From Fimbriosthenelais zetlandica (lineage: Eukaryota), in contig OZ365113.1 in NCBI GenBank assembly GCA_977030845.1, forward strand, positions 27,528,001 through 27,592,000: a DNA stretch of 64,000 bases, read 5' to 3'. A program made the position numbers and the translations under genes. The notes beneath the pieces were generated by a model. That model worked only from the letters and a program-made list of their open reading frames with translations. It searched no databases and was not told the origin of the DNA. Numbering within the stretch: the stretch's first letter is position 1; each line of letters starts with the position of its first letter. Below, piece by piece: positions 29,501 to 52,625 of the stretch.

Positions 29501-29813
29501 CAATAAGGCCCATTCAATAATTACAGTCTCATATTTCACCCGAGGCCATACATAACGTGTTAATTCTACTCTAACTTTGCCTGTATAAAACTTATATAAG
29601 GCTGAAGAACTCCGTATTATTTTAATAAGATGAGATCTTCACTCCAGTTCAACCTAAAATGAATTGGGACTGTAAGAACGATTTTGGCATCATTTGAGTC
29701 TGATCTGGCGTTCATTTGTGATCTATATCAAACTAATATATTCACTGCCACATGCCCCAGAATGTAGTAAATTTAATTTTTATATTAAAATGTCATATCT
29801 TTATGTTTTTCAG

Positions 29814-30275
29814 GCGGTATACAGTTATTCGAAGGTCGCATGCAAGTGTCATGGTGTCTCGGGGTCATGCAGCCTGAAGACATGCTGGAACCAACTGCCA
29901 CAGTTCCGTGAGACCGGGGCCCGTCTCAAAGACAGATACGACGGAGCTACAGAGGTGAAATTCAACAAGCAAGGAACACGATTAATCAGGGCTGACCGAA
30001 GATATAATAAACCTACAAAAGAAGATCTGATCTACTTGGATCAGAGTCCAGATTATTGTTTACCCAACAAGGAGACTGGGTCCATGGGGACTGCTGGTCG
30101 GAGGTGCAACAGAACGTCAGCAGGAATGGATGGATGTAACTTGATGTGCTGCGGCAGAGGTTATAACACATTTAAAGCCACAGTTACAGAAAGATGCCAC
30201 TGCAAATTTCACTGGTGTTGCTATGTTAAATGTAAAACATGTAAAAGAGTCTTAGACATTCACACATGCAAATAG
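29814..30275 (+). CDS. Wnt5: Wnt5, last coding exon
   Basis: gtttttcAG acceptor ending at 29813 (phase 0); stop TAG at 30273-30275. Contains [16 protein letters not shown] (the lipidated Ser motif), [22 protein letters not shown] and [16 protein letters not shown]. Confidence 0.98.
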
Positions 30276-34624: not shown

Positions 34625-34630
34625 TTTATT
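34625..34630 (-). terminator. Candidate poly(A) signal AATAAA of the minus-strand gene
   Basis: TTTATT on + about 520 nt downstream of the stop codon at 35148. Confidence 0.45.
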
Positions 34631-35147
34631 CCTTTGTAGATTTCATAGGGCTTTTGTTGCTTCCTTTGATAACCGTCATGTTCATGAATGTTATTAAAAC
34701 CGTCTTTGAAACATTTCTCAACTTTAAATTATACTAGTTATGGGTATTAATATGGCTTCCTAATTCGAAAGGATTAGAAAGATCAGACCCCAGGCACATA
34801 GTATAAACTAAAACCCTTAATCATTTAGACAGCTACTGATTATTGCCATAAGATTCCATCTTATAAACTACGATAGAGTCTAAAAGCTTGACAATTGAGA
34901 AACATCCATACACACTTTTGTTTCAAAAATCATTTTAAGTTGAGCTTGGAAAATAATGATCTCGTCCTTCGATTGTGCCGATCCTGGCATCAGTGTTGAT
35001 CGTTGGGGGTTGGAATGGTCCATGGTAGAAACTGGTAGGACATTTTCGTTCTCGTTTCCCTCACCAGAGAGGCTTGATGTGCTGGCCATGTTTGGAGAGT
35101 GTGCTGGTAGATGTCAGGTTCACCACCCTGCCACCTGCCAGCAAGGA

Positions 35148-35280
35148 CTAGTACCAACAGTAGGCCTCTATCTCAGAGACCTGGAGCCAATTGATGTACA
35201 TTTCATTGTGCTTGAAAGGAGGTGGGTATGGGCAATGGTAGAGCAGCTTGTCCATACATGGTTTGGCTTGTTTGTAAGCA
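35148..35280 (-). CDS. Small secreted cysteine-rich protein, last coding exon
   Basis: On the minus strand, ttattttcAG|T then GCT TAC AAA... gives AYKQAKPCMDKLLYHCPYPPPFKHNEMYINWLQVSEIEAYCWY*, with stop TAG at 35150-35148. The phase-2 start matches the donor of the 41607-41731 exon (AG+T = Ser). Confidence 0.85.
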
Positions 35281-37022
35281 CTGAAAATAAGACAAACAGT
35301 TGTTGAAAGATTGAGTTAAGATTGTCTTGACATTTAAACGGAATCGCATCAAATCTGAAAGTCGTGTCTTCCACTGACATGAAAGGAACCAATTAAAACT
35401 TAGTAATCAAAGTAACCTCTATGGCTTTTCCGAAACACTTGGTATTTGATCATTTATCGTCATTAGATCTTCATTAATCAGTACTTCTTTGGAAATCGTG
35501 GTTGGGTGGATCGGTATAGATCATAGCTATATATATTTTGTGATCTTAGGATCCTATAAAGCATGTACTGGCCTCACTTATAATATTATAGCAAGCTTTG
35601 GCATCATCGAAGATCTAATAAGAAAAATAAATTTGAAGTTTAGCATGAACCAGGATACGGTAATAGGAAATTCAATTAACAAGAGTGATATCATCCATTC
35701 CATACGATCTGATAAAAGTCAGACTGTAAAAAAAATCCATTGCGCTATTTCATATATAAGAAATCATCGATGCTCGTTGAGAAAGCATCGTCTGGCAGGC
35801 ATGGGTGGGTGAATGTCCCAGATAAGGGACAGCTTTGGCCGTATCAACTTCCCTAAATGGGTATTACCTCACAGCAATGGAATGGAAATGTTATCAGTGC
35901 AATATTGTGGAAATATTGGACACAGAGGCATTGACTATGGGCGTTGACTTTAAGGTTAGAACCATTGGCTTGCACTAGAACACGAACCGGCATTGTTAGA
36001 GTATTCTGCCATGAGCAAGAGGCGAGCAATAAAAGCCAATAATAGGCTAGTACGAGGAGAATGGAGGCTGTGTGTGTGGAAGAGATAAAGGCTATGACAC
36101 GTGGGGATCCTTATCCATACAGACAGGCTGGAAGGAATTTACCACCAGATTAATCTTTAACATCCATTAAAGAAGGTTGACACTGTATTCATTGACAAAA
36201 CTGTACTCTCACTTCTTAAATGTAGACACGGGATAGCCTATGGATTATTATGTAAATGACCACCACTTGTAATTCAGGACAGTTTATCCTGTGCCTTAAA
36301 GTGTCAGTTCCCCTTGAAGATTTCAAATTTGAATTTATTCAGAAACGAGACTAGAATTACTTCATTTTATTCTCGTTGATCCTAACCACTGACCCCAAGC
36401 ATTTCTCAGTAACCAAGACAACTGTGACAACGGTCGCCTCCTCAAAACACACTATAAATGTAACTTTATACAAAGAGTAGCGCTTATACATGTAGAACCT
36501 ATAAAATAGTATTTCCCTTTTAATCAAAAAAGATCACAAGGATTATGTGAATCCGATTACCAAGTTCTGTATGTCTTCAGAAATTGAAGGAGGGCTTATG
36601 CACCCAGACAGAACCAATATCAATAAATCTCATCAATTGTCCCACGCTGGAGGCTAGAAATGGCATCAACGAGGGCATGGACAATGAAGGCTCATACCAG
36701 AACAAGACCAGCCAACAATAGGGGCCAAGGGCCTCCTTGGTAAATTGTGCAATAAAAATCCTCATCCCTGTTGTCATTACTGGGAGTCACACAAACAGAG
36801 GCGATGACTTTTGGTTCAAATTACAGGGGAGTGAGTGTAGGAATGATGGCTATAGCTGACGTATTGTGTCTCCACAATGCTACCTCCTCCCCTCCCCTCA
36901 TACCATCCCCCATGTACCCACCCATTAGGACCACCCTACATGATGCCCCCATCCTCTTGTCAACACATCAATCTTTACATCACTCAGCCCCATGTACTCC
37001 ATGACAGAAGTCACCATTAAGA

Positions 37023-37210
37023 CAATGTCAAAATTTATATCATGGTTCCAGCCAGGTTAATTTGAGTTACAAAATATTTATGTAAAATCATTAATTCATT
37101 TTGTCATATATTGAATTAGTTCTCTTGGCAATGCCAAATTTGATTATGGTTCCAACCAGTTTAATTTGATTTACAGTTACAAAATATGTCTAAAATCATT
37201 TTGTTATTAT
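37023..37210. repeat. Degenerate tandem duplication, period about 106 bp
   Basis: caatgtcaaaattt...atggttccagccaggttaatttga...gttacaaaatat...taaaatcatt recurs from 37129 as caatgccaaattt...atggttccaaccagtttaatttga...gttacaaaatat...taaaatcatt. Confidence 0.8.
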
Positions 37211-39098
37211 GCCATATGGGCCTCCTGTTTCTGTCTTATACATAGACTGAGCAATTTGACATTCCATTATTTTAAATTTAACCTTATATAATCCACAATT
37301 TCACTGTCCATACCAAACTATCAATACCTTATATCTATATATAGGCGCCTGCCTAAAAGTAGTACTTAATCATTAGAATACATAGACAATAGACAGCTGA
37401 TGATAGCCTTTGTCTGGGGTCACATTCAATGATAAAGCTCTGAGACTAATAAGCATTTCGTGTACTACTTGCAACTACCACAACAGCCAGGCTAAGTAGC
37501 AGATGGAAATGGAGAATTGAAACAACCCAATGTTCCATTGCAATTAAGTTTAGGGACATATACAACTCCTCAGTATGTGTGAATAGGCTGACTAATGCAT
37601 CTCAAGTGGGAATTCCGATCCAGAGTTGAAACATAAGCATTGAGCACAGATCAGAGTAATCAGTCAAAAGTGGAAGGTACTGATGCAAATTGGTCTGATT
37701 AATATTCACATCCTTGGTGAAATTTCCTTTATAAGTGCCCTACAATGTCATGCGAGTTAGGACCCTTTCATTTCGTGCGGAGGTCAGCGCCAGAACTGCA
37801 GTCGTAAATTTTACTGCAGGATGACCTACTTCCGGTAATAAGTCAACGTCATCGTATTTGTACTAGATAACCCCTATTCAGTATATTGATGACCAGAAGG
37901 ATAATCCATGATGGGTTTTTAAACGTTAAAATCCAAGCCATGCCCATTTATGCTTTATAAGATGTGTCCTCTTTGATATTTCACTTCCTTTATGCGTCCG
38001 GCTATTATTTACCCTGACACCGCCTCAACAACGTCCATGCTCCAAACCAATCAAGTAAAACGCTGGCACACCAATCGGAGAAAATGGTGAACTAAGGCAA
38101 TGTCAGTGTTGACAGTAGATGTGTAGGGGTAAAAGGAAGTGGTGGATGTGACATGCAAAGACTAATTATATGCCAGGTCGTACCTCATTTCCGGTACCTG
38201 GGTCACAGAGATTAAATGGGATTGTTGTCAGATGCGTGACCCTCAGGATTCCTCCCCTCCTATACACACAATAAGAAACCATCACAACCTTTAGCTAGGG
38301 CTTTGGGATATATTTATATAATGTTTGATAATATTAAAGGTCCTTTTGACATTTAAATCTTCAGTCTTTTGAGAAGTTGGCACTGCACACTGAAAACATA
38401 CTCTCTAAAATGAGAACATGAATTGCAAGGAGAAACCCACATTGGTCTTTCCCTCTCCCTGCGCACTTCATTTCAAACTAATCATTGGACAGTTATAGTC
38501 TTGAAACTCACACGAAATAGATGGATGGTTTGAAAACTCAGGATAGGAACCACTTTGAATAGTCTTTGTGCATTATCCTGAATATGAGTCGTCAGCGTAT
38601 GATGAAGCTGTAGATATTGGATATCAAGGACAGGGATTATAATGAAGGCCCTTTAATAACAACATCAGATGATCAATCATAAGAAGCCAGCCTCCCGAAC
38701 AAAGCTCTGTGCTAGCATATTCCCCATTAGTCATATTTGATGAAGGGAACCTCCCTGATACTCTGTCATCAACTTCATGAAACAGACTCAAATGCCATTT
38801 TCCTATGTGCCAGACAAACATAATTATTTTAAAAGTCTGTCCTTTTGTCATTTCGCCTATTTAGTCCTATAGAGAGTTCTACTACTATATATATATAGCC
38901 CTTATCCATGCATGTTTGCCCAATAATTAACTTTTTGCATAATTAGAAAACACTTCTTTGTCGGTTTATGCCTGCTAAACAACCGATCAAAATATCTCTT
39001 CAAGAAATTAAATATTTTCGTTTATACTCATGACAAGTTGCTCCTTAGATATTAGCATTGCCTACTCAGAAATATGCCGTCAGAACGTTCATCAGCTA

Positions 39099-39171
39099 GC
39101 CCGGTTAGCTCAGTCGGTAGAGCATCAGACTTTTAATCTGAGGGTCGTGGGTTCGAGTCCCACATTGGGCG
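39099..39171 (+). tRNA. tRNA-Lys-TTT: tRNA-Lys, anticodon TTT, intronless
   Basis: 73-nt cloverleaf: acceptor GCCCGGT/ATTGGGC; D arm TAGCTCAGTCGGTAGAGC (A box); anticodon stem TCAGA/TCTGA with loop CT-TTT-AA (anticodon 39132-39134); T arm GTGGG-TTCGAGT-CCCAC (B box); discriminator G. Confidence 0.97.
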
Positions 39172-39176
39172 TCTCC

Positions 39177-39180
39177 TTTT
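39177..39180 (+). terminator. Pol III terminator (T4) of the tRNA gene
   Basis: TTTT run 5 nt after the tRNA 3' end. Confidence 0.7.
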
Positions 39181-40011
39181 ACGATTAATATCGTTGAAGT
39201 ATAGGGTTTAAACATACATCTGGCCTGTTTTCAAGGAGACATGAACTACAGCTAGTAACCCAGTTAGACATTGCAATTGCATATTCGTTGTTATGAAACA
39301 GGTCCATGAATGATGTCCCTCGGAGGACATTTCTTCCTATGGGTCCTTCCATAAGTCATTTATGGTCAGTCGTGACTCAGTGGTCAATGGCCGGTATTTC
39401 ACCAGATGACCCTGTGACCCATGTCAGGACATGTGAGTGACCAGCTTCTATGAGATTACGGGTCAGCGATGTCCAATTGACAAGTCACGTCCTGTATTAA
39501 ACCGGACTGTTCATCCTGCTCAAGTGACTGATACTATAGAATCACATACATTGTATTTATAAATGAAGATAAGCCGGAGTTTCCATTATCGTATGTAAGT
39601 GGCAGTCATACATGTGTAGGCCTACATGCATATGCACAGGCATTATAAATAGATTTAACATTAATTGCCTTGCATGCTAAAACCCTTCCTCGTGCCAGTC
39701 TGATTACATGCACTACTTTAGTAATGCAAATAATTGAATCAGTCAAATAACTCCGGGCCATGTACTTTCAAGATAAGCAGATCATGATTGGTGATCGATT
39801 CTGACCGAATACCCTAATCATAACCTCAAATGTAATAAGGTAGTCATAATCTAATCCATAATTAATCCCTTGCTACACATCTTACCTATATGTATACATA
39901 TACAACTCCATGCAGATATAGGATATTCCCTCATTCATCACCAGAGTGTTAGAAACTTAAGAGAGTTGGACAGCACTGGGCTTTTTGCATGCAGGGCTAC
40001 AACTAGGATGC

Positions 40012-40244
40012 ACCAGGGCTGAACCAGGGCTGAACCAGGGCTGATCATGGACTGACTGGATTTTTCTGGGCTACAATTTTGATCCAACAGGGCACATAGC
40101 CCAGTATAAGTGATAATGGGTCGAGACTGGGCTTAGCCCAGATCGTGATCATGGACCGAGACTGGGATTTTATCTGGGCTACAACAGCATCCAACAGGGC
40201 ATAGCCCAGTAAGTAATTATGGGCCGAGACTGGGCTGAGCCCAG
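40012..40244. repeat. 3 x 11-bp repeat followed by 2 x ~104-bp dyad-rich repeat
   Basis: accagggctga x3 at 40012-40044. Longer units start at 40043 and 40147, each containing ctgggcta...tagcccag and ctgggct-N-agcccag inverted repeats. Confidence 0.88.
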
Positions 40245-41606
40245 TAAATGAACCTTGGATCCAAAAGCCCTCCCTTGCCTCCCTCCCCCGCCTCACTCCC
40301 TCCCCACCAACCAAATTGCTTCAGTCAAAGTTCACTTTTACAAATAAAAGAGTTATATATATATAGACAGTCACTCCCACCCCGCACACACACCCCTTCC
40401 AATAAAGATACTTAAGATATAAAAACTTTCGTTACATCCCCATACGTTAAGTCTGGTCAGTTTTGGAGCGAATACCTCTGTCTACCCATTACTCAGAAGA
40501 AGCCGGGATTGAAGATATGGCTTTTAGCAGCACATGGTGTAATCCAAGCTGGCAGTTTTTGGTAGATGGACAAGACAAGTACATGACTCCCATCTTAAAG
40601 CCTGTGTCTCACGGTCTTGTTCTCCTTAGAGTGGGGACTACCTTAGCCTGTCATTCTATCTGTGAACCACTCTCACTCTGGCTTCTTGAGTCTCAGAGAC
40701 ACAATAAAGTCAATAAGCTAATGGTGAGTGATTGAACCATACAGTCAACACCGAGGTTCACCCCTCTATCTGCTTAGCCCATTTATAGATGACATGCATG
40801 CTTGGCTATAGAGCATTTCGGGTAATTTCTGCATGACCTTTTGGCTCAGAGAACTGCAGGAAAGCTTGTCATTCACTCCGAAATACATTCATTTTCAAGG
40901 CTCAAAGTGAGAGAACACTTGTTATTATAAAGAATGGCATATCGTCAAATTGAAAAATTAAAATATCCATGCCCAGTTCCTTGCTTCAGAAATTGTTTAG
41001 TAGCAGGCTTTTTCAGTGTTTAAACCACATGCGAACCCCTCCGACAATAACAGCTTGGTCATAATTATTTAATGCCTCATTTTTTTTCTAGGAAAGATCC
41101 CTCACCTTAATTGTCACATCAATTAATGCATCACCTATTGCTAACGGTAATAAACCATCTCTCATTTATTCTGCAACAACTCCACACCTTCCTAATGGAT
41201 CCCTTTACTTTATGGGAATAAATTTGAGATGAAATGACTCAGAATTGCTTGTTTTGATTTAAACATGCTAGATTCTGTGAATTATTGAAGGGCGTTCGAA
41301 ATATAATGAGACCATGTAACGCCTGAACCAGCAGACACAATATATAGAAACCAGAGCAATCATTCCTAATGTAAACCTTGTATCTATAAACAGATATATC
41401 ATGTAGGTAATTATCCATTAGCCTCACATCCAGCTGTTATTTATTAATTGCTCGCCATATGCTCAGAGAGGCACTCAACGTGTGTACTGCAATGACACAC
41501 GTTTTATACCCAGACACGTGCAACGAGTTCTTAGCCATTTCATATTTCAAATTATTTACACATTTACTATACAATTTATATAGTAATAATGATTTTCATA
41601 CATTAC

Positions 41607-41731
41607 CTGCATATTTGCTTTAACGTGGGTGTTTGGTAGGCAAAATCGGCGAAGAGTTTACAGCATTTGACCGCTTCATATACAAACTTTTCTTCCCTCG
41701 GGCATGTCTTATCTGTTGGTCTTGCAGAGAT
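41607..41731 (-). CDS. Small secreted cysteine-rich protein, middle coding exon
   Basis: Strong acceptor gttctgtttttcttttcAG| and donor TGCAG|gtaatg. The exon is 125 nt, phase 0 to phase 2, and open as ISARPTDKTCPREEKFVYEAVKCCKLFADFAYQTPTLKQIC. Confidence 0.88.
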
Positions 41732-44700
41732 CTGAAAAGAAAAACAGAACTGTCAGTGAATATTCCTGTCTACCCAGAGACATTGAAGGCCAATCAACCC
41801 TGATTACACTGTCTACAAGCCATAATCATGAGGTAAATTGCCCAGAGTAATGCTATATGAAATGGAAATTGACATCGCCCTAATGATATTTAAAATAATT
41901 ATAGGGATGTCATAGGAGAAATGCATTTGCTGTTTTTCATGCTGATGGTGAGGTACTTTAAAAAAATGAAATATGAGAAGGGAACAAGATTTGTGTGAAC
42001 TGGATACTCGAGCATATACCACATAATATTATATAGGCCCTATATGTACAGTATAATATAAAAAGATAATTAAAAATGACTGGAAAGCCCATACAGTAGC
42101 CCATACATTTATGACTTTTGAAAGCACTTCCTCATGGTCATTCAAACCTGAGATAATTGCGCTTTCTTAACGTGCTTTCTAAACTCCCTACATAGAACAC
42201 TTTACAAGTCGAATGTTTATAAGTGGAAAGTTTACAATTCTACCAATATATAAAAATGAAATATGGGCCTGGCAGAGTTGTGAAGATGAATGTCTCGAAT
42301 TCATAACAAAATAATGAGGGGTGAATGTCCACATTCACTCAGCCATGTGATCGCTTGGCTGGTGCTCCCAGCCTCCACCACCCCCACACTGCTGCTCCCA
42401 TAAAATTAATATTTACACTCTATTATCTTCTATTTATGTCTTGCCATGGACATAAAGTGCAGCGAGGTGGAACAGAGCTAAATGAAATGGGAGACTTACA
42501 ATGAAAATGGTAATTCATTTCCCTGCGATTCTAAAAGCAATGTTATTGATTGTACGTGAAACAGTGTGTGTTGAAGAGTCTGGACTGTGTAGTTTAACAA
42601 TGAATCATGATGGATAATTAATAACGCTTTCAAAGTGAGAGCACTTTTATGTATACCGAATAATGATGTAAATATTGGCATTTGCAGGCCTCTATAGTTA
42701 TTGGCATTATTAGACTAATTTCTAGAGGACTGGTAATATCCACTGGGATTATATAATACAGACTCAATTGACTCTGTCTACATTGTTCATCCGATGGTCA
42801 GTGTATATGAAAATTATGACTTCATATAACATTTCAAAATTTATATCCAAAGTAAACATTATCTTTTGACTTCGTTGCAGGGTAAAAAGTCCTGAATTTT
42901 AGTGCTTTGTTTTTTGGAGTCAATGATATCAATTTCAATGAGACAGAGGCAAACAGACGTCCATAGCTTGGATGATTTTTTCTGGGATAAAAAGAATCTG
43001 CATGATCATTAAGAGACAGTCTGGCAATCATGACAATTCGTGGCTGGCTGAAATCAAGCACGGCACGTTTCCTCTCACAAAATGTTTGTCATCCACTCAT
43101 TGTGATCCGATCTGCCATGTGAAGCTTGTTACATGGTCAAGAATAGCCCATCTACAATAATCTATCGGTTCTTGACATCTGTTCACCAAATCCGTGAGCT
43201 GACCAAAAAGTGATCACCTGCTGAACCGGTGTTTGCAATTTGTACTTACCTACGTTATTGTGTATCGAAAGGTAAACATGACATTTTCAATGAATTATTT
43301 AAGCAGGTCGCTACAATGATGCATGTATCGGATGTAGCTAGTATTCTAGTCCAGATATAGACAAGGGGATTATGTTAGATTCTGAATCACTCTAACTTAA
43401 ACTCTACCAACACCTTATAGACGTCTCCTTGGAGATAAACCAGTGGTCTGGCCCTTCTTCCCATAAAACAAATCCTTACAGTTGCCTTAACTAATCCTAT
43501 AGATAATTAGTTTGCCTAAAGGGGTAAGAACAAATAGAGAAACTGCCATTTATCCGCCTTCCAAAAGCTGTCTTATGGGATTCTTTCTCACGAAGCGAGT
43601 GAATCTCATATAGATAGGTGTGTACACACCATTACAAGCTGGGAGCTACTCCTTTCCCCGAAGGCATTGCTTAAGATAACAATAAAAACCGCAGTTGTAG
43701 ACACATTTCTGAAAGGCATTGTCTTTGTAGGTCAGCACTGCATACAGGGTTCTTTCTCAATCATAATCAAAGCTTTGGGCTTATTTGCTAGGATTACATC
43801 AAAAGGATAACGACGATAAGAAGGCTTGTACTGGCTACATCAGCAGTGTTCTATCAATGGGTTTGTTGAAAGACCACAATGATATAGAATCATCGACTTG
43901 GACAGTGATGGAAATTAATGTGATTTTTTCCTCCCTCCCCAATCTCAGGGGTGAGATTCATCACTAAACAGTTCAATTTTAAAGCTGAAGTAAAGGAATC
44001 GTATACGGAGTCCAATTTTGGACCCTTATATATCTAGTTTACCGCTTCGATGTGGGTGCCTGTTGCATGATTGATCTAGAGGACTTTCCACATTTCTTTC
44101 CGGACATTACAAACTATAGCCCCAAAATCATTGACAGAAGGAATCAAGAGACAATAACGTGAACCAGCAAAAACTTCGTTTATTCAGCAATAACCATACA
44201 GCCATATAGTGCAACATGTGTTGGTGATGCCTGTAGAATTTCAAGATGTGTAGATGAGTAGCTCAATGCATGCCACCAATTTCTGCCAATTATTTTTTCC
44301 CTGATAGTCATGTCACCTCCAGAAGCTCCCTACGAAAGCATTATTAGTGGAGAATGTTAATATTATCTTGAAATCTGATCCCAAGTAATGGTATCTTTAT
44401 ATTTCATGTCGGAAAGGCAGTCTACATGCGTAGAACAAGTGACAAAGTCTATGTAAGTTGGGGAAGGGATCCCAAGGTGGGTCTACTTCCATATGGCATT
44501 TACAGCGGAATCTTGCACAGCCCCTTTAAGAGATTCTGGTTGGAATATAACTAGCTGCGTTCATTGTCCAATATCATTTGTTTGTCTGGAGCTTCAAGCA
44601 TCCAAGTCTTGGCAGGAAATTCAATTATGAAAAGGGACGCTGGTTGCGATTACAAGATGAAACAGCAGCAGCTAGATAATCAGGTTCATTGGAACAGAAC

Positions 44701-47700
44701 ATGGTCAAGCAAATTAATCGACAGTCTGCATTTATTATCATATCATTGCCTTAACGTTTTGCAAACTGCTTCCTAAATTAGTATAGAATGGGGAAGACGT
44801 GCAAGAGGAACAATATGAAGCCAATCCCCCCATTCGTTAATGCGTTATTGGATAAGAGGGAATCCAATCATCATGTTCCCATCAAAACTATTTCGAACAG
44901 TTATTCTAATAGAGGATTCCCATTAGTAGATTTTAAATGTGCTCCTTTAGAAACTGTTCCTCTGGGAACCAAGTGTGCTTTTACGTCGCTGGCCCAGGCT
45001 TTTTGCTCTTCATTGTCTTCTTATACTCTCGTGTGTCAACAATATCAAGGAGATCATGCATCGCACAAAATCACGAACGCTGCTCAAGTGCTTGTTGCAG
45101 TCTGCACGTGACCGGAAGTGTCACCTTTCAAGCTGGATTTTAGCCTCAAGGCTTCTCAAAAGCGCCTTTGCGAAACTGTTCACATTTGAAGCTTTTTGCT
45201 TTATTTAAGGCATACAAAACAAATGTTGCATAATTATTTATCTCCATCTTCAGTTCTTGTGCAGGGAGAGAGCCAGCTATAGGAGACCTGGACTCTATCT
45301 GGATGATGACCGTGACCTGTAAGCTGAACCTAGATTCATGCATCATCCTGGTTGTACAGAATCCATCCATAAACAACACTAGGACTAGAGGTCCCTCCAG
45401 CAGAACACTTAACCCGAGTAGTCCATCCCTGACTGCGTAACCTCTCCTGTCAACTCTAAGATACAGGAGACAATAATGTTCTTTGACATTGCCTCACTTT
45501 CCTTGGCTGTCATATTTTTAACACTCTACTCTGAGCTTTCCTTTTGGGGCTGGTCCACTCAAAAGTGAACAAATTCGTTCATAAGAAAAACGTTCATAAA
45601 TTATGCATTTAAGAAGAAACGACACAGAAATAGAGTAGAAAAATGTCTCAGTGTGCAAGCAAGAGAGCATCTATAGCTGCCATCTGCTTGAAATGAGCAC
45701 AAATGCAAAATATTCTCTTAATAAATCTGAAATGGCTCTTAATTCTCTGCATCATACGACGTACCAGGTCCATATCTAACCCCAAAGCGTTATCAGTCAC
45801 AAGCTCTGACAAGTCATGGCATCTCCCCCTGCTGGTTCCCAGACCACCAATCGCCTGCTGTCAACTAACTGAAATATGAGTTTACAATCCCATTTGGCCA
45901 AATCTTAATTACGAATCACGTCTGATCAATTAGTCGTGCTCGGAGATCACAAAAGCCTATAGATAACATTGGCAACCATCCACTTGGAAGCAACTGCTGT
46001 GTGGCTCATTGCAAATCCCAGTATTTCATTCCATTGCTGGCCACCTGAACCCTAAAAAAACCAGAAGAGTATGGTGATATAGTGATGTCCTTCTACCAGG
46101 GTAGAGGGCTGCTAAAAGAGGATAAACTTTAAACACTGGCTTTTCTTCTTCATGCTTCTGTTTCCCTGCACATTTGTGTAATGGGAACAGCTGCAGCACA
46201 CATAAGAAATCCTTGAGTGAGTGTGGAACAATATCAATAATCACAAGGGTTGGGTGAGGATCAATCGGTCAGAAGAGAACAGAATGAGCCGGGTGCCCGC
46301 ATGACCGCACTTGTGATTAATGACCTATTATTTGTAAATGACGAAACTGGAACGTGTAAAATTTGGTGCAGTTTAAAACTACATACAGACTTACAACTAA
46401 AACCCAGCACATATCCAGAATTTGGGACGGTGGGTGGGGGTGAGGTTGCATTTTCGGTGCTGAGGGCAATTGCTGGTATTCAGGCCTAAAGCGCGTTCTA
46501 CACTATACCGATTTATGATCTGATCAGATTAAAATCTGACATGCAAGATGTGTCCCCAAACCGCATCAGATCTGACATGCACAGATCTATGAGAGAAACA
46601 TCCCGATCATGATCTTATCTTCATACACATTATGCCTATTTTTAATCTTACTTCAATTTGATCTGATGAGACCGTTAACGGTAAAGATCATGAAATCGCA
46701 CCCCAGATTGTATAGAGCTATAATGTATATTCAATACATATTGAATGCAGCATTTGAAATTTCCGGAACTGAGCTTGGAAACTTGGGCTTTAGCTTGACA
46801 GTAGGGCTCAAGCTTTACGCTATTCAATGACATTGTAAGATCACATATATACTATAGGTTTATCCTCTTGGAGCCAATCACAAGCAGCAGTGAGTAAGCT
46901 CAAATGTCAGTGGGAAACAACAGGCTAGTGACACGGTCCGCTTGTAATTGAATCAAAAACCCATCAGTTGCCATTGAAGGATGGGAGCAATATAATAGAA
47001 CAAGCCTTGATCTACTGAGGCCAAGCAAGCAGACCAACCACACAGAAAACAGTAGAGAGCTGAACTAATGATGATTTGTGGACAATTGGATTAAAAGGAC
47101 CTCTGCTTTGGTACAAGTTTTATCTGTCACAATACGACCATGATCAAATCATGTTTGTATAAAGTACCAGTCACACCTTGCTGGACAAAAAAATACTTCA
47201 GCTACAGTGTCTATAGAACGGCTGTCTGGCGTATATTCAGCCAGTATAAAATAATGCTACAAATAAGTGTTAAAGACCATGGGTATCCATAATAGACAGA
47301 GGATGTCACTACTGTGTAGATTATCTTGCAATAAAAGCTGCGATCCAATCTGCAGAGCAATTATTTGAATGATTGCGGGATATTCTAGGCCATTTGTACG
47401 TGTTCATTATCCATTAACATTATATTATATTAAGCCTCTGTATCTTTGTGGTCATCATGCATAAAATACATATAAATCAGCTATAACCCTGTCATGCAAT
47501 CAATTTGGTGGTGAATAATGGCATTGTTTCCCACGCATACTCATCAAAATTAACTTGTGCATGCCAACAAACTCACACCACTGTACTGTAAAGAGCATGA
47601 CTATACTGTATACAAAAAGGCTTTGTGATTTTTAGTAGATCAGATGACATTTTATCTAAGGAGTCAAAGGACCGAAAAATCTATGATATTTTAGCTTTTC

Positions 47701-50700
47701 CTATAGCCTTCAGATAAGATCACGTTCAAATTTTACTAAGTTCTATAGAGCTTCTATAATATTATGTTGCTTTTCACCTTACACAAAAGGAAAAACTTTA
47801 GAAGGAGTAGGTTTTACCGAATACATGTCACTGATACCTCAGCTGGGACCCTGGACATCAAAGTTCTGCACTCATTGAATCCTTTCTCCAAATTAAAAAT
47901 TCATCTCATCCAAAGAGCAAAAAATCAAAATACACACCGGACAACCCAACTTCTGTTTGAGCTCCAATTTGCCTCTCCGATCGCCCACAGAGCAAACTCC
48001 GTTCGAAGCCATTTTGAATGCAATTGTCCAATAGCAGAAGTGATTATTTATTTGAGCTTTGGTGGAAAAACAACTCCAGTCAAGCTAATCCATCACTGCC
48101 ATAGGCCTTTCAAATAATCAAATGAGTCCTAAGTTGCACATTAACCGTTATGGTAATCCCTTAAAGTCAATTAACTGAATGATGGTTTCCCTTGAATATT
48201 TTAATTTGATTAGCTCAGTCCTTGGAACCCAAATAAGCATCTCGTCTGTTGGACCAAACAACTGTGATATTTCATGACCTTCAAGTTGTTTAATATGCTG
48301 AACTGAGTCATAGTGGGATGTAGCAAAACTGTCAACACGACAGCAGTGAACTTATAATTCACGAAGCTGGCAGTCTCTTAGGACTCATTGCTACAATACA
48401 TGTACATGTATATTTACCATTGGGACTGTAATAGAGAAGATATGGCTTCCTAGAGGCTATTGGAAAATGATTACAATTTACATTAAATTTTACAGTCTTC
48501 ATACAAATTTAAGTGCGGACCACCTGGGTTAATTACATGGCGTACCCTATACATTTAAAAAACATGAGCGAGCTCCGGAATCCTTATACATCTGGCTCTT
48601 CATCTGTCACCTGTCATGCCTGTTTGCTCCTGACTATGTCCATCTGTCAGTCACAGGTCTTGTTTTTCTGTGTTTGTTACAATTCGTTCTAATATTAGAG
48701 CTTCCCTCTGGTGAATCAAGGCTAATAAGAGATGTCAAGTTTCTTGCGTCTCCTCTGAGTCACATTTCTTGACCAGGTTCCTATCTCTGATCTCGGTATG
48801 TTCATAAATGGAAAGACAACAGGAACCTCAGCAGGAAGCTATCTCTATTAGCCTAATGACTGCTGCTTCCATCTCTAATTGCTTGAGGTATGAGATGACT
48901 AATTTTAAACCTGAAGAAATATAGAAGCAAACGCCTCTCCGCAGATAACATCCGAGGCGAATGGGCTTTTTCCTGGCTATAGTGCACTAACCAACCTTCA
49001 ACAACAATACTTGAAAAACTACATGGCTGCGGAAAAGAAAAGTTTTTGATGTGTATAGGCCCTATTATGAAGTTATTATGTGTTGAGGTTTTGCCCTAAA
49101 GACATTGGAGAACGTGACTTTAAATGACAAGTGGACCTATCCAAATATCCTGGAGTTTCCAAACGAATATTAGCCATAGACTTAGCATGCTCAATATATT
49201 CCTTTTGAAACAAGCCCCAGATCACTTACATTTATGCAAAAGGAAAAACATAACTAAAGTGAAGATGAAATAGAAGTTATCCTGAACATTGACGAATTCT
49301 GAACTGAATATGATATAGATACATGCTAGATCTATCTGCATGTCGAGGACCAAACGGAGCGAGCTGGCTTATGTGCTTTACGGTGGGGAACACGGACAAA
49401 ATTCCTACTCTGCACCTTATCTTAAACCCACAGGAATCATGAAAGATGGAATTATGGGAGGAATTCATATTGGATGGTTTAAATAATGGTTTAAATAATA
49501 CCAGATTGATATCCGAGAGTGCGTTCTTATCTGCCTGCGTGGAAATTTCCCAGTTGATCTAAATTAAATCCTAATCAGGTAAATTACCCCCATTGCCTCT
49601 CAACTACCTCTTACATGAGGCTGGAAAAAATAACGATACTTGAAATCCATACTGGAAAATCTCTCCCTGCGGGGGAAACTTCCAAATATAATTTCTCAAG
49701 GGAGAAAGAGTTGTCATGTTTCTAACTCTAAAAAAAATACTACATCAAATATAGACAGTTGCCGGACACTCTGTCTAAAAAGGGGATATGCTTAGGAAGC
49801 TGTAAATGAAAGTTGTCAAGCAGAGGAAGCTGCATGCAGCCGAAACTCATCACCTACTATATACTGTCACGTCTGACTAAATAAAAATGAAAAAGTGTGA
49901 AATCACGTATAATGACCTTTTATGCACTTGGCACCAATCACAGAATAGAGAACCCGTGTGACTTATATTAGAGAGATATACATGTATATGAGGGATTATC
50001 TCTCATGAGTTTTTCCCTGAGGTGCAACTTATGAATTCAACTGACCAGGCTTTATAAATATGTAATGTGTAGTACAGAAAATACATTGGTATATTGGCTT
50101 TTCTTCAGATTTTTTGCAATTAGTATATAGTGGAGGAACCTCAGTAGAATGTCCGCAGATAATGAATTAAATATAGGACCACCTGTTTCCCCGATACATT
50201 ATTGACCAGGGGATTTTCAGTGAATTATGCATAATTGGGTAACTATGACTCGCTTGATAGAATGACTCTCTCAACAATATTTTGAATAATTTAGATCAGA
50301 TTTCAGTCGATATTGTGTATATAACTAAACTTCAAACTGCATAGGATCAATTTCTGTTGACTCCTGTGGAAATAAGAATTGACGTCGATGCCCATAGCAT
50401 CTTCGATCCAGCATGAGCCTTGTGAGAGTTGCTTAGATGCAGAAATTGAGGCTCGGAATTTAAAGTTAATAAGTATTACCAATGCATCTACGATAGATTT
50501 GTCATCAGCATACCATTCATTAACCAATTTACAGATTTTAAAAGTTTACAGATTTAAAAGTTAAAAGTTTTTCTTGCATAATTTTAAGTAACTGTTAAAA
50601 TCTTGTTTTGGGTGAGAAACAAGGAAATGGGATTATTGAACAAATCTCTGCTCTCTGAGTGGAAAAGCTCATTAATTTTCCTTTAAAAATCCGGCCTCCA

Positions 50701-51908
50701 AATAAAATCTGCTTTCCTTCCGTCCGAAGGGACCATGAAATTACTAATCTATCAAATGGCTTGTAAAATTTAATTTGTCCAATTTAATCTGTAATTGTCA
50801 CAGAAAATGTCACGATTTGTCCAAAGTTCCATGCTGAATTATACAGGGATCATTTGTTGCTCTCCGGCTACTATGAACTGGAAATTGGTCAATTTGAGTA
50901 GAGTTTGTCCCGTTTAAATTGAAGAGGGTCTGAAACACTGTTTCGAATTAGAAATTAAATGATTTTCTTTTCGATGTATGGAAACAATTTTTTATCCTCA
51001 AGTATATCACTGAGATGATCTATTGTATATATAATCCACTTTTCAGGCAGGAAGATATAAAGCATATTAAGTATGCTCTTTCTATTAACGTTCTCTGTAT
51101 CATAATGATAGCCAGGGATACAAAGCCTTATGAAGCTCCTTGGTTCTTGTCAGAAGTCACTGTTCCTCTTTAAAAGACTTCCACTGATCTAGGGGCTGGG
51201 TATAGACTGGCATTAGATGATATTTGATGATCCAGCCTTAAAACTCTTATCTCTAATAGGATGAAAGAGCCTGGGGAAATAAGAAAGCTCACCAATCTCC
51301 ATCAATATAGTTATGTGGAATCTTCCCAGAGCCGAGTTAACCCAGGCTGGAGTGGCCCACTATTTAGTGGGGTCTGATCCCACATAGGCCAGACCTATTA
51401 GACTATACCATCACTCTATTGGCCTGCTTTCAGATATAATATACTCACCCTATCTTTTGTATGCAGAAGCAATACAGTGCTTAAAATTTTGTTATCTATC
51501 AGATTTGTGCATTTGTAAAGGGGAACAGTACGGACCCCATGGACATGGTGGTCTTCAGTGATGGGAATCCACACATGAAATGAACAGTGGATTCGCTGCA
51601 TGCAGGAGGGGGCTATGTCTTATCTCATGACTGGAACTGTTCATTCATTCTATCTGACTCTGAGCACTGGACCAGTCTGTTGTCTGACAACAGTAATCAC
51701 ACACATCTATCTAGCTAACTTACTATAGAATAACTTACTTTATACCCATCCCTTTCCTACCATAGGCCTATATCTATGAGTTTAACTCAATATATAAGGT
51801 TATAAAGTAAAAGAAAATGACCGTGTTAACGAATTCCATATAGGCCAGTGATCAGCATGAGCAATTTCTATGGGACTTTCAGGAAATATATATCATAGAT
51901 ATACTTAC

Positions 51909-51959
51909 ATGTACCACAGCTACTCCCAATAATAATAATATCCGTATTAATGATTCCAT
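51909..51959 (-). CDS. Small secreted cysteine-rich protein, signal-peptide exon
   Basis: Acceptor ttttttcttcttccAG|GCA ATG G (exon starts at 51962) and donor CAT|gtaagt, phase 0. Encodes MESLIRILLLLGVAVVH, which joined to ISA-RPT gives a classic n/h/c signal peptide. Confidence 0.85.
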
Positions 51960-52336
51960 TGCCTGGAAGAAGAAAAAATCATTATGATCAGAGTGCAATA
52001 AAAAGAAGTAATTATCGAAATAAAAGTATTCCCTGTGTTCCTAAATATGTTGGTTTTCTGTCAGAAAGTGTACAACATAACATTGGATAATTTGCCCCCT
52101 TTTCCCTCTGGTCAATTGAGCTGTTTCCATTAAGTACAATTGATGTATCTATTATCCTGTCTGCTATATGGCGGATAGGTACAAAGTTATTACCATGATG
52201 GAAAAGATAATTTCCATGAGTATTGCTCCATTATCGAGGTTTACAGTACTAAACCAAAAGTGTTACTATGTTTCCCCATACTTCTACTCACTCTTTGTAT
52301 TTAACTAAGTGTTTTCCCTCCTCAGTCCCTACTTAC

Positions 52337-52520
52337 CTCAGGGTCCTGGTATAAAATGGCTGGTCTCCTCGACTGTCCACATCCGCGCGCGTCCCTGCCA
52401 AGATATACACATGCAATTCCGTCCTCCTCCCCCTCATCCTACTCCTCTCCCCCCTCCTCCCCCTAACGGCGCACCGAGGAACTCTCCTCTCACCCACACA
52501 CGCCATGGCTGACTCACAAT
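52337..52520 (-). other. Probable first (5'UTR) exon of the small secreted protein gene; 5' end approximate
   Basis: Strong donor CTGAG|gtaagt (intron starts at 52336), 374 nt upstream of the signal-peptide exon acceptor. CpG/GC-rich and adjacent to a promoter-like motif cluster. Confidence 0.6.
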
Positions 52521-52625
52521 GCAACGCTCTTGCCGGCTGCGCATGCGCGCGCTCAGGATTGCGACATGGGGTTCGACGTCACAAAAGTGTGAAGAACGTC
52601 AGAAAGTGTGAAGAACGTCACACGC
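52500..52625 (-). promoter_or_regulatory. CpG-rich promoter-like region of the minus-strand gene
   Basis: TGACTCA (AP-1-type) at 52510-52516, TGCGCATGCGC (NRF1-type) at 52538-52548, and three ACGTCA half-CRE sites at 52576, 52596 and 52615, directly upstream of the first exon. Confidence 0.6.

What the first reader, a model, noticed from the sequence alone, without database searches (positions are those of the whole stretch)
35148..52520. Hidden 4-exon gene for a 102-aa secreted 7-Cys protein with a neuritin/RGM-N-like core, tail-to-tail with Wnt5
Seen in sequence: three short exons absent from the ORF track have canonical GT-AG sites and matching phases (0, then 2). They give MESLIRILLLLGVAVVHISA-RPTDKTCPREEKFVYEAVKCCKLFADFAYQTPTLKQICSAYKQAKPCMDKLLYHCPYPPPFKHNEMYINWLQVSEIEAYCWY*, with a likely UTR exon, promoter and poly(A) signal. 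Established knowledge: the C-x8-C-x7-C helix motif (QICSAYKQAKPCMDKLLYHC) has the same spacing as neuritin/CPG15 ([20 protein letters not shown]) and the BMP-binding N-terminal domain of RGM proteins. Inference: unlike those GPI-anchored proteins it ends at CWY with no hydrophobic tail, so it would be a soluble ligand-like factor. The odd seventh Cys (CC at 40-41) could allow covalent dimerisation or lipidation. I do not recognise it as a named gene. It may be an undescribed secreted signalling molecule or modulator linked to Wnt5.
Basis: partly seen in the sequence, partly recalled or inferred. Interest (0 to 1): 0.8.

Follow-up and report, generated by a model that had tools for sequence, protein, structure and literature searches.

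The report
Unannotated small secreted three-helix protein gene
The three short coding exons almost certainly form a real gene for a small secreted, disulfide-locked helical protein with two older sister genes on the same chromosome, but its likeness to neuritin/RGM is weak, any tie to Wnt5 is unsupported, and no expression data could be obtained.

Summary
On the minus strand, exons 51909-51962, 41607-41731 and 35148-35280 have strong GT-AG sites and phases 0 and 2.

The gene looks real. The same genome holds two diverged paralogues on the same chromosome, about 245 kb and 11.5 Mb away. Both have the same layout: a signal-peptide exon, identical intron positions and phases, and six aligned cysteines. 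Synonymous sites are saturated while protein similarity survives.

No homologue turned up outside this genome, and no Pfam or PDB sequence match was found for the window protein. No sequencing runs were listed, so there is no RNA evidence.

AlphaFold2 without an alignment predicts a three-helix bundle at low to moderate confidence. Foldseek ranks neuritin-like proteins and the RGM N-terminal domain first, but not significantly (E about 1-6). Geometry-only searches return generic helical bundles. Paralogue B gives sub-threshold Pfam hits to DUF19 (E 0.0018) and RGM_N (E 0.063).

The neuritin/RGM-like cysteine framework is therefore a fair lead, not a shown membership. The odd seventh Cys is not conserved. 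The paralogues are not next to Wnt genes. The one relative with 10 kb of readable DNA downstream of Wnt5 shows no copy. This is a lineage-restricted orphan secreted family of moderate interest.

The parts
52510..52620 (-). Promoter-like motif cluster: three TGACGT (CRE half-sites, two inside a roughly 20-bp tandem duplication), one GCGCATGCGC palindrome (NRF1-like) and one TGAGTCA (AP-1-like)
   Evidence: Three of the window's 21 TGACGT sites lie within 45 bp. This is the only GCGCATGCGC in the window. GC is 0.585 at 52400-52599 against about 0.35 in the flanks. Function was not tested.
52337..52420 (-). Putative non-coding first exon (5' UTR). The donor GAG|GTAAGT lies after 52337. The start site is unknown.
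   Evidence: sequence only. One search gives the donor and the matching acceptor at 51962. No RNA evidence.
51909..51962 (-). Coding exon 1: ATG at 51959 and 17 codons of signal peptide. Phase-0 donor GTAAGT.
   Evidence: Paralogues have a signal-peptide exon of 18 and 15 codons with the same phase.
41607..41731 (-). Coding exon 2: end of the signal peptide, predicted helix 1 and the start of helix 2. It carries C27, C40, the non-conserved C41, and C58. It ends 2 nt after the C58 codon (phase 2).
   Evidence: Paralogue exons match at E 6.9e-16 to 2.8e-21 with the profile (circular, since the profile contains them). The intron position is identical.
35148..35280 (-). Coding exon 3: rest of helix 2 (KPCM motif), the conserved PPF loop and helix 3 (NW motif). 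It carries C67, C75 and C100. Stop TAG at 35148-35150.
   Evidence: Paralogue B exon 3 matches at E 4.6e-11 with the window protein alone.
34625..35147 (-). Probable 3' UTR up to the first AATAAA (34630-34625)
   Evidence: Sequence only, untested.
29811..30275 (+). Context: last coding exon of the convergent neighbour, a Wnt5 orthologue. Its stop lies 4.9 kb from the stop of the new gene.
   Evidence: PF00110, 221 bits; best named hits are Wnt-5a/Wnt-5b.

Best explanation
This is a real, unannotated protein-coding gene with three coding exons and probably one 5' non-coding exon.

Its product is a pre-protein of 102 aa. After the signal peptide is cut (probably after ...HISA), an 82-aa basic protein of about 9.9 kDa remains. 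It is predicted to fold into an up-down-up three-helix bundle locked by three disulfides, formed by the six family-invariant cysteines C27, C40, C58, C67, C75 and C100. It has no membrane anchor, so it should be released from the cell.

The gene is one of three old paralogues on one chromosome of this invertebrate genome. No relatives were detected elsewhere.

The most conserved surface is helix 2 (KPCM), the helix 2-3 loop (PPFxK) and the start of helix 3 (NW). This is inferred to be the contact site for an extracellular partner, so the protein most likely acts as a soluble ligand or ligand-binding factor.

Shown: the exon structure, paralogue conservation, the cysteine framework and the absence of a tail. 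Inferred: secretion, the disulfide-locked bundle and the binding role. Unknown: the partner, expression, and any relation to Wnt5.
For: - Exons, splice sites and ORF.
- Paralogue B (L003: 794-847, 1160-1269, 1515-1641) and paralogue C (L004: 1089-1133, 1254-1390, 1503-1635) have the same three-exon plan and phases 0 and 2. The second intron falls 2 nt after the third conserved Cys codon in all three.
- Six Cys, P-P-F and N-W are invariant.
- Synonymous differences are saturated (pS 0.76-0.79) while pN is 0.40-0.46. Protein similarity has therefore been held by selection long after neutral similarity was lost.
- Only three loci exist in 447 Mb, so this is not a repeat.
- AF2 predicts helices at 31-49, 54-74 and 85-101, with pLDDT 59.6 for the full protein and 67.0 for the mature protein.
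- No hydrophobic C-terminus and pI 8.2-8.9 in all three.
- The extra Cys pair of paralogue C lies on helices 2 and 3, 6 and 7 residues from C58 and C100. That fits an antiparallel helix 2/3 packing (inference).
- Exon 1 is the only strong signal-peptide exon candidate upstream.
- A motif cluster sits at the proposed promoter.
Against: - No RNA evidence of any kind. No runs were listed.
- No homologue in 5.8 billion clustered proteins (word search), in 1.84 billion representatives (exhaustive search; the single hit is a spurious 15-fold tandem-repeat ORF) or in JGI metagenomes.
- No copy near Wnt5 in four related contigs.
- The structure models were made without an alignment and have low to moderate confidence. 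Disulfide pairing was not computed.
- The introns of the window gene (10.2 kb and 6.3 kb) are about 30 times longer than those of its paralogues, so this copy could be poorly expressed or silent.
Confidence: 0.75

Rival explanations
1. It is a free-standing, soluble homologue of the RGM N-terminal domain and neuritin module. It works like RGM_ND, binding the finger region of BMP/GDF ligands through the helix 2-3 loop and helix 3, as a diffusible BMP modulator.
For: - RGMB_ND is a three-helix bundle with three disulfides. Its helix 2-3 linker is essential for BMP/GDF5 binding (PMC7354924).
- The family here has the same element count, and its most conserved stretch is the helix 2-3 loop.
- Foldseek's top Swiss-Prot hits are NRN1L, neuritins and DRAG-1 for the full model, and DRAG-1 residues 17-86 for the mature model (TM 0.49, probability 0.51).
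- RGMB chains 6z3m, 4uhz and 6z3j align over 65 of about 71 residues at rmsd 3.2-3.9 A.
- Paralogue B scores 14 bits (E 0.063) on Pfam RGM_N across the C2-C5 region.
Against: - All structural E-values are above 1.
- A geometry-only search of 48,161 chains gives 111 chains at Z of 5 or more, and RGMB is not in the top 50.
- The window protein has no Pfam hit at E up to 10.
- The NRN1 and RGM_N HMMs do not pick up any of the three loci in the genome, although RGM_N finds the true RGM at 45.8 bits.
- BLASTP and hhalign against that RGM_N give nothing.
- C1-C2 spacing differs: x12 here and x4 in this genome's RGM.
- Co-folding with this genome's BMP2/4 could not be run.
Confidence: 0.12
2. It belongs to a fast-evolving, lineage-specific family of secreted effector proteins, for example antimicrobial or immune, reproductive, or matrix or mucus components, rather than a developmental signalling factor.
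For: - It is small, basic (pI 8.2-8.9) and Cys-rich, with a signal peptide.
- The paralogues are highly diverged: 28-54% identity per exon and pN 0.40-0.46.
- No detectable homologues outside the genome.
- Orphan secreted Cys-rich families were also noted elsewhere in this genome by the scan (untested notes).
Against: - There is no tandem expansion, only three dispersed copies.
- A conserved loop and helix-face motif across old paralogues suggests one specific conserved partner.
- There is no expression or tissue information either way.
Confidence: 0.2
3. The window copy is not a working gene. It is either a silent or decaying paralogue whose exons are still recognisable, or the proposed exon joining is wrong.
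For: - No RNA evidence.
- The introns are about 30 times longer than in the paralogues.
- The gene is absent from every protein collection searched.
Against: - The ORF is intact over 102 codons, all six family cysteines are kept, and every coding-exon splice site has a strong consensus, despite synonymous saturation relative to both paralogues. A neutrally decaying copy of that age would have lost these features.
- Paralogue B is also absent from the protein collections. Absence there reflects missing annotation, not pseudogene status.
Confidence: 0.08

Closest known systems
Neuritin / CPG15 and neuritin-like protein (Pfam NRN1, PF15056)
   Same: Both are small secreted-pathway proteins with a signal peptide and a helical core. 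NRN1L and neuritins are Foldseek's top Swiss-Prot matches for the full model (ranks 1, 2, 6, 14, 17, 23, 28).
   Different: There is no NRN1 HMM match for the window protein or at any of the three loci. Foldseek E-values are 1.9-6.6. There is no C-terminal hydrophobic GPI signal. Neuritin's own cysteine spacing was not checked with a tool here.
RGM N-terminal domain (Pfam RGM_N, PF06535; RGMB_ND in PDB 4uhz, 6z3j, 6z3m)
   Same: Both have three helices and six cysteines (three disulfides in RGMB_ND, PMC7354924). The C-x8-C-x(6-7)-C spacing on helix 2 is shared. The helix 2-3 loop is conserved here and is functionally important in RGM. The DRAG-1 N-domain is the top Foldseek hit for the mature model. 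Paralogue B scores 14 bits on RGM_N.
   Different: All scores are below the Pfam cut-off (24.2 bits), and the window protein scores nothing. There is no RGD/RGN loop, no von Willebrand-type C-terminal domain with its autocleavage site, and no GPI anchor. C1-C2 spacing is x12 rather than x4. There is no detectable similarity to this genome's own RGM_N.
DUF19 (PF01579), a cysteine-rich domain of unknown function
   Same: This is the best Pfam score of the family. Paralogue B residues 31-74 (C2 to C5) match profile positions 91-137 at E 0.0018 and 18.6 bits.
   Different: The score is below the 23.2-bit cut-off. Only about a third of the 157-position model is covered. The window protein and the exons of paralogue C give no hit. 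No DUF19 gene above the cut-off exists in this genome.
Generic three-helix bundles (MIT domains, ribosomal bS20, RAMP ectodomain, Legionella lpg2328)
   Same: These give equal or better geometric fits: Z 5-8 at rmsd 3-4.5 A.
   Different: Apart from the RAMP ectodomain, a receptor part outside the cell, they are cytosolic or bacterial proteins that are not stapled by cysteines. The resemblance is one of shape only.

Membership tests
Neuritin (Pfam NRN1, PF15056) | Match to the family HMM at or above the gathering score (27 bits) | tested here: not met
   hmmscan of the window protein finds no family at E up to 10. PF15056 searched over the whole genome gives a best hit of 19 bits elsewhere and none at the three loci.
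Neuritin (Pfam NRN1, PF15056) | C-terminal GPI-anchor signal (hydrophobic tail) | tested here: not met
   The proteins end at ...YCWY...AYC and ...ICPK, with no hydrophobic tail.
Neuritin (Pfam NRN1, PF15056) | Shared fold with neuritin models | tested here: inconclusive
   NRN1L and neuritins rank first in Foldseek against Swiss-Prot models, but at E 1.9-6.6 and TM 0.33-0.37. Without the signal peptide, only NRN1L remains, at rank 19.
RGM N-terminal domain (Pfam RGM_N, PF06535) | Match to the family HMM at or above the gathering score (24.2 bits) | tested here: not met
   The window protein has no hit. Paralogue B scores 14.0 bits, E 0.063. The control, this genome's true RGM_N, scores 47 bits and 45.8 bits.
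RGM N-terminal domain (Pfam RGM_N, PF06535) | Three-helix bundle held by three disulfides | tested here: inconclusive
   Three helices are predicted (pLDDT 59.6 and 67.0), and six cysteines are invariant in the family. Disulfide pairing was not computed. RGMB_ND aligns at Z 5.0 and rmsd 3.2-3.4 A over 65 residues, tied with unrelated bundles.
RGM N-terminal domain (Pfam RGM_N, PF06535) | Part of a larger RGM protein (C-terminal domain, GPI anchor) | tested here: not met
   The ORF ends right after helix 3 in all three paralogues.
RGM N-terminal domain (Pfam RGM_N, PF06535) | Binds BMP/GDF ligands | not testable with these tools
DUF19 (PF01579) | Match to the family HMM at or above the gathering score (23.2 bits) | tested here: not met
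   Paralogue B scores 18.6 bits, E 0.0018, covering profile positions 91-137 of 157. The window protein has no hit.

The most novel reading that the evidence does not exclude
The three genes encode a new family of diffusible, stand-alone RGM_ND/neuritin-type modules: the BMP-binding three-helix unit of RGM without its anchor and Neogenin-binding domain. They would act as soluble modulators of BMP/GDF (or possibly Wnt5) signalling in a spiralian. The window copy would be driven by a CRE/AP-1-type, activity-responsive promoter, as CPG15/neuritin is in vertebrates.
Probability: 0.1. Interest if true: 0.7.

Novelty: new variant of a known kind. Interest (0 to 1): 0.4.

Why it matters
The finding shows that short-exon genes for secreted proteins, spread over 17 kb, are missed by ORF-based views. 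They can still be validated without RNA data, through diverged in-genome paralogues that keep intron positions and cysteine frameworks.

If the weak RGM_ND/neuritin likeness is real, this would be a soluble version of a BMP-binding module that is otherwise known only in membrane-anchored proteins. It would give a new handle on extracellular control of BMP signalling in spiralians. If the likeness is not real, this is one more lineage-restricted orphan secreted family whose partner is still to be found.

Tried and rejected
- RNA evidence. Both sequencing-run searches listed no run, so read laying could not be used.
- External homologues. None came from word-based searches with the window protein and paralogue B. 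The exhaustive phmmer search gave one hit, P0001, rejected as a 15-fold tandem-repeat ORF whose score is summed over repeats. None came from JGI metagenomes. None came from the ESM Atlas feature search with exon 3. The Atlas fold search failed twice with a remote error.
- Sequence matches for the window protein. The PDB sequence search found none at E up to 10. Pfam found none.
- Microsynteny. DNA around the Wnt5 last exon was fetched for four related species. L032 and L033 give about 2.3 kb downstream, L034 gives 10 kb and L035 gives 1.9 kb. tblastn and hmmsearch with the exon profiles find no family member. The two closest relatives (79-81% Wnt5 identity) had no retrievable DNA. The result is inconclusive.
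- More paralogues. The weak hits L014, L015, L016, L023 and L006-L010 were inspected and rejected as chance. L014 may be a cysteine-less relic.
- Alignment-based structure prediction. An alignment mixing the full protein with paralogue exon pieces was misaligned by MAFFT and was not used. Typing three full sequences was left out because of the rule on long strings.
Neither was retried by another route, and there is no verdict on binding.
- A DUF19 search of this genome found only a junk hit.
- Literature searches for a neuritin-RGM-DUF19 relationship or for invertebrate neuritins gave nothing usable.

Full report
**Observation.** The minus-strand sequence at the stated coordinates shows three short coding exons with strong consensus splice sites. 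When joined (51909-51959, 41607-41731, 35148-35280), they give a 309-nt ORF. The window has no N and is 40% GC. The neighbour on the plus strand is a Wnt gene. Its last exon ends at 30275, 4.9 kb from the stop of the new gene, so the two genes are tail to tail. Its closest named relatives are Wnt-5a and Wnt-5b.

**Is it a gene?** No sequencing run, RNA or DNA, was listed for this DNA, so expression could not be tested. The decisive evidence came from the genome itself.
- A six-frame search of the 447-Mb assembly with the 102-aa protein found a second exon-3-like frame at C19:27836920-27837057 (50% identity, E 4.6e-11). An exon-2-like frame lies 230 bp upstream of it. A third exon-3-like frame lies at C19:39044646.
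- Reading these loci gives two complete genes. Paralogue B is at L003 794-847, 1160-1269 and 1515-1641 (96 aa). Paralogue C is at L004 1089-1133, 1254-1390 and 1503-1635 (104 aa).
- Both genes start with a short hydrophobic signal-peptide exon that ends in phase 0. Both have the second intron exactly 2 nt after the codon of the third conserved cysteine, as in the window gene.
- Six cysteines align: window C27, C40, C58, C67, C75 and C100. Other invariant positions include a Pro after C27, P-C-M on helix 2, P-P-F in the loop and N-W on helix 3.
- Synonymous sites between all pairs are saturated (pS 0.76-0.79), while pN is 0.40-0.46. The duplications are old, and protein similarity has been kept by selection. 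A chance ORF or a long-dead pseudogene would not keep an open frame, six cysteines and intact, strong-consensus splice sites at every coding exon.
- Profile searches find no further members. One cysteine-less fragment on C27 may be a relic.

The non-coding first exon and the poly(A) site remain sequence-level proposals. Immediately upstream of the proposed first exon lies a GC-rich 110-bp block. It holds three of the window's 21 TGACGT sites, the window's only GCGCATGCGC, and a TGAGTCA. This looks like a promoter but was not tested.

**What is the protein?** Outside this genome nothing related was found.
- Two word-based searches of 5.8 billion clusters found nothing.
- An exhaustive phmmer search of 1.84 billion representatives gave one hit. 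It is an artefact, a 1341-aa tandem-repeat ORF with 15 weak stretches.
- JGI metagenomes and PDB sequences gave nothing. Pfam gave nothing for the window protein at E up to 10.

AlphaFold2 without an alignment predicts three helices at residues 31-49, 54-74 and 85-101. Mean pLDDT is 59.6 for the full protein and 67.0 for the mature protein, with pTM 0.53 for the latter. All three proteins are basic (pI 8.2-8.9), about 9-10 kDa when mature, and end within two residues of the last cysteine with no hydrophobic tail. They should therefore be soluble secreted proteins. The two extra cysteines of paralogue C lie on helices 2 and 3, at +6 and -7 residues from C58 and C100. That geometry is expected for a second disulfide between antiparallel helices, which fits the predicted bundle. 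This is an inference, not a computed result.

**Test of the neuritin/RGM idea.** For the idea:
- With the full model, Foldseek against Swiss-Prot AlphaFold models ranks human and mouse neuritin-like protein first and second. Five neuritins and C. elegans DRAG-1 (an RGM) also fall in the top 30. The E-values are only 1.9-6.6.
- With the signal peptide removed, the top hit is the N-terminal domain of DRAG-1 (residues 17-86, TM 0.49, probability 0.51, E 1.4). NRN1L drops to rank 19.
- Against solved structures, RGMB N-domain chains appear at ranks 23-35. They have some of the lowest rmsd values (3.5-3.9 A) and the highest target-normalised TM-scores (0.51-0.53) in the list. Realignment gives Z 5.0 over 65 of about 71 residues.
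- RGMB_ND is described as a three-helix bundle with three disulfides whose helix 2-3 linker is central to BMP/GDF5 binding (PMC7354924). In the new family, that loop is the most conserved stretch.
- Paralogue B gives sub-threshold Pfam hits over the C2-C5 region: DUF19 (18.6 bits, E 0.0018) and RGM_N (14.0 bits, E 0.063). This genome's true RGM_N scores 47 bits in the same run.

Against the idea:
- Nothing reaches significance.
- Geometry-only searches of 48,161 chains give over a hundred generic bundles at Z of 5 or more, and RGMB is not in the top 50.
- The NRN1, RGM_N and DUF19 HMMs do not find the three loci in the genome.
- BLASTP and hhalign against this genome's RGM_N find nothing.
- The spacing of the first two cysteines differs from RGM.

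My reading is that the family shares a cysteine-stapled three-helix design with RGM_ND and neuritin, and may be a very remote relative. Membership is not shown, and several defining features of both families are absent: the HMM match, the GPI anchor and the C-terminal RGM domain.

- The seventh cysteine (C41) is not conserved. Paralogue B has Leu there and carries a different odd cysteine next to the signal-peptide cleavage region. Paralogue C has an extra pair. A conserved role in dimerisation or lipidation is therefore unsupported.
- Nothing ties the gene to Wnt5 beyond adjacency. Paralogues B and C are not beside any of the genome's Wnt loci.
- In the one related species for which 10 kb downstream of Wnt5 could be read (L034, 76% identical Wnt5 exon), no family member is present. 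Three other contigs were too short to tell.
Binding stays untested.

**Verdict.** The protein is a soluble, secreted three-helix, six-cysteine module from a three-member family that appears lineage-restricted. The neuritin/RGM-N likeness is a reasonable but unproven lead. The Wnt5 and odd-cysteine ideas are unsupported.

Earlier notes of this scan describe the genome as an invertebrate, probably a worm. I did not test that. The Wnt5 exon's best named relatives are molluscan. Novelty is a new, orphan variant of the known kind of small disulfide-stapled helical secreted proteins. Interest is moderate.

Noticed in passing
window 52510-52620 (minus strand): A tandem duplication of a roughly 20-bp unit (TGACGTTCTTCACACTTT) gives two CRE half-sites, followed by a third in TGACGTCG. 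About 30-70 bp further on come a GCGCATGCGC palindrome and a TGAGTCA site. This is a compact CRE/NRF1/AP-1-like block of the kind seen at activity-regulated promoters.
   Followed up: partly
G000:C1:52063879-52064109 (L028:1501-1731, minus): This is the genome's true RGM orthologue. Its N-terminal domain exon scores 45.8-47 bits on Pfam RGM_N. Its cysteine spacing is C-x4-C...C-x8-C-x6-C-x21-C, and it has KGD in place of the vertebrate RGD/RGN loop.
   Followed up: partly
G000:C29:5244743-5309832: Matches to Wnt-domain exons on both strands lie within 65 kb, probably four or more Wnt genes, which resembles the conserved Wnt9-Wnt1-Wnt6-Wnt10 type cluster. Chromosome C19 carries four separate Wnt loci at 11.06, 16.24, 16.55 and 27.53 Mb.
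   Followed up: no
G000:C27:7666655-7666744 (L014, minus): A short open frame carries the family motifs PCM, PPFKK and NW but lacks the second and last cysteines and ends early. It may be a decayed fourth family member, or it may be chance (E 0.022).
   Followed up: partly
P0001 (protein from the exhaustive search): This is a 1341-aa ORF made of about 15 near-identical 84-aa repeats. It scored E 8.6e-12 against a 102-aa query only because weak matches add up over the repeats. It is a useful warning about summed scores on tandem-repeat translations.
   Followed up: yes
G000:C11:17922046-17922351 (L038) and C13:19439556-19439861 (L039): These are single-exon mature domains of a BMP2/4 orthologue (192 bits to human BMP2) and of a second BMP whose best PDB matches are BMP6, BMP3 and BMP2. 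At least a dozen TGF-beta family loci exist in the genome.
   Followed up: partly
L004:1246-1262: Exon 2 of paralogue C has two possible in-frame acceptors, TTTTCAAG|GCC and GGCAAAG|GGA. They would differ by four residues at the signal-peptide cleavage region.
   Followed up: no
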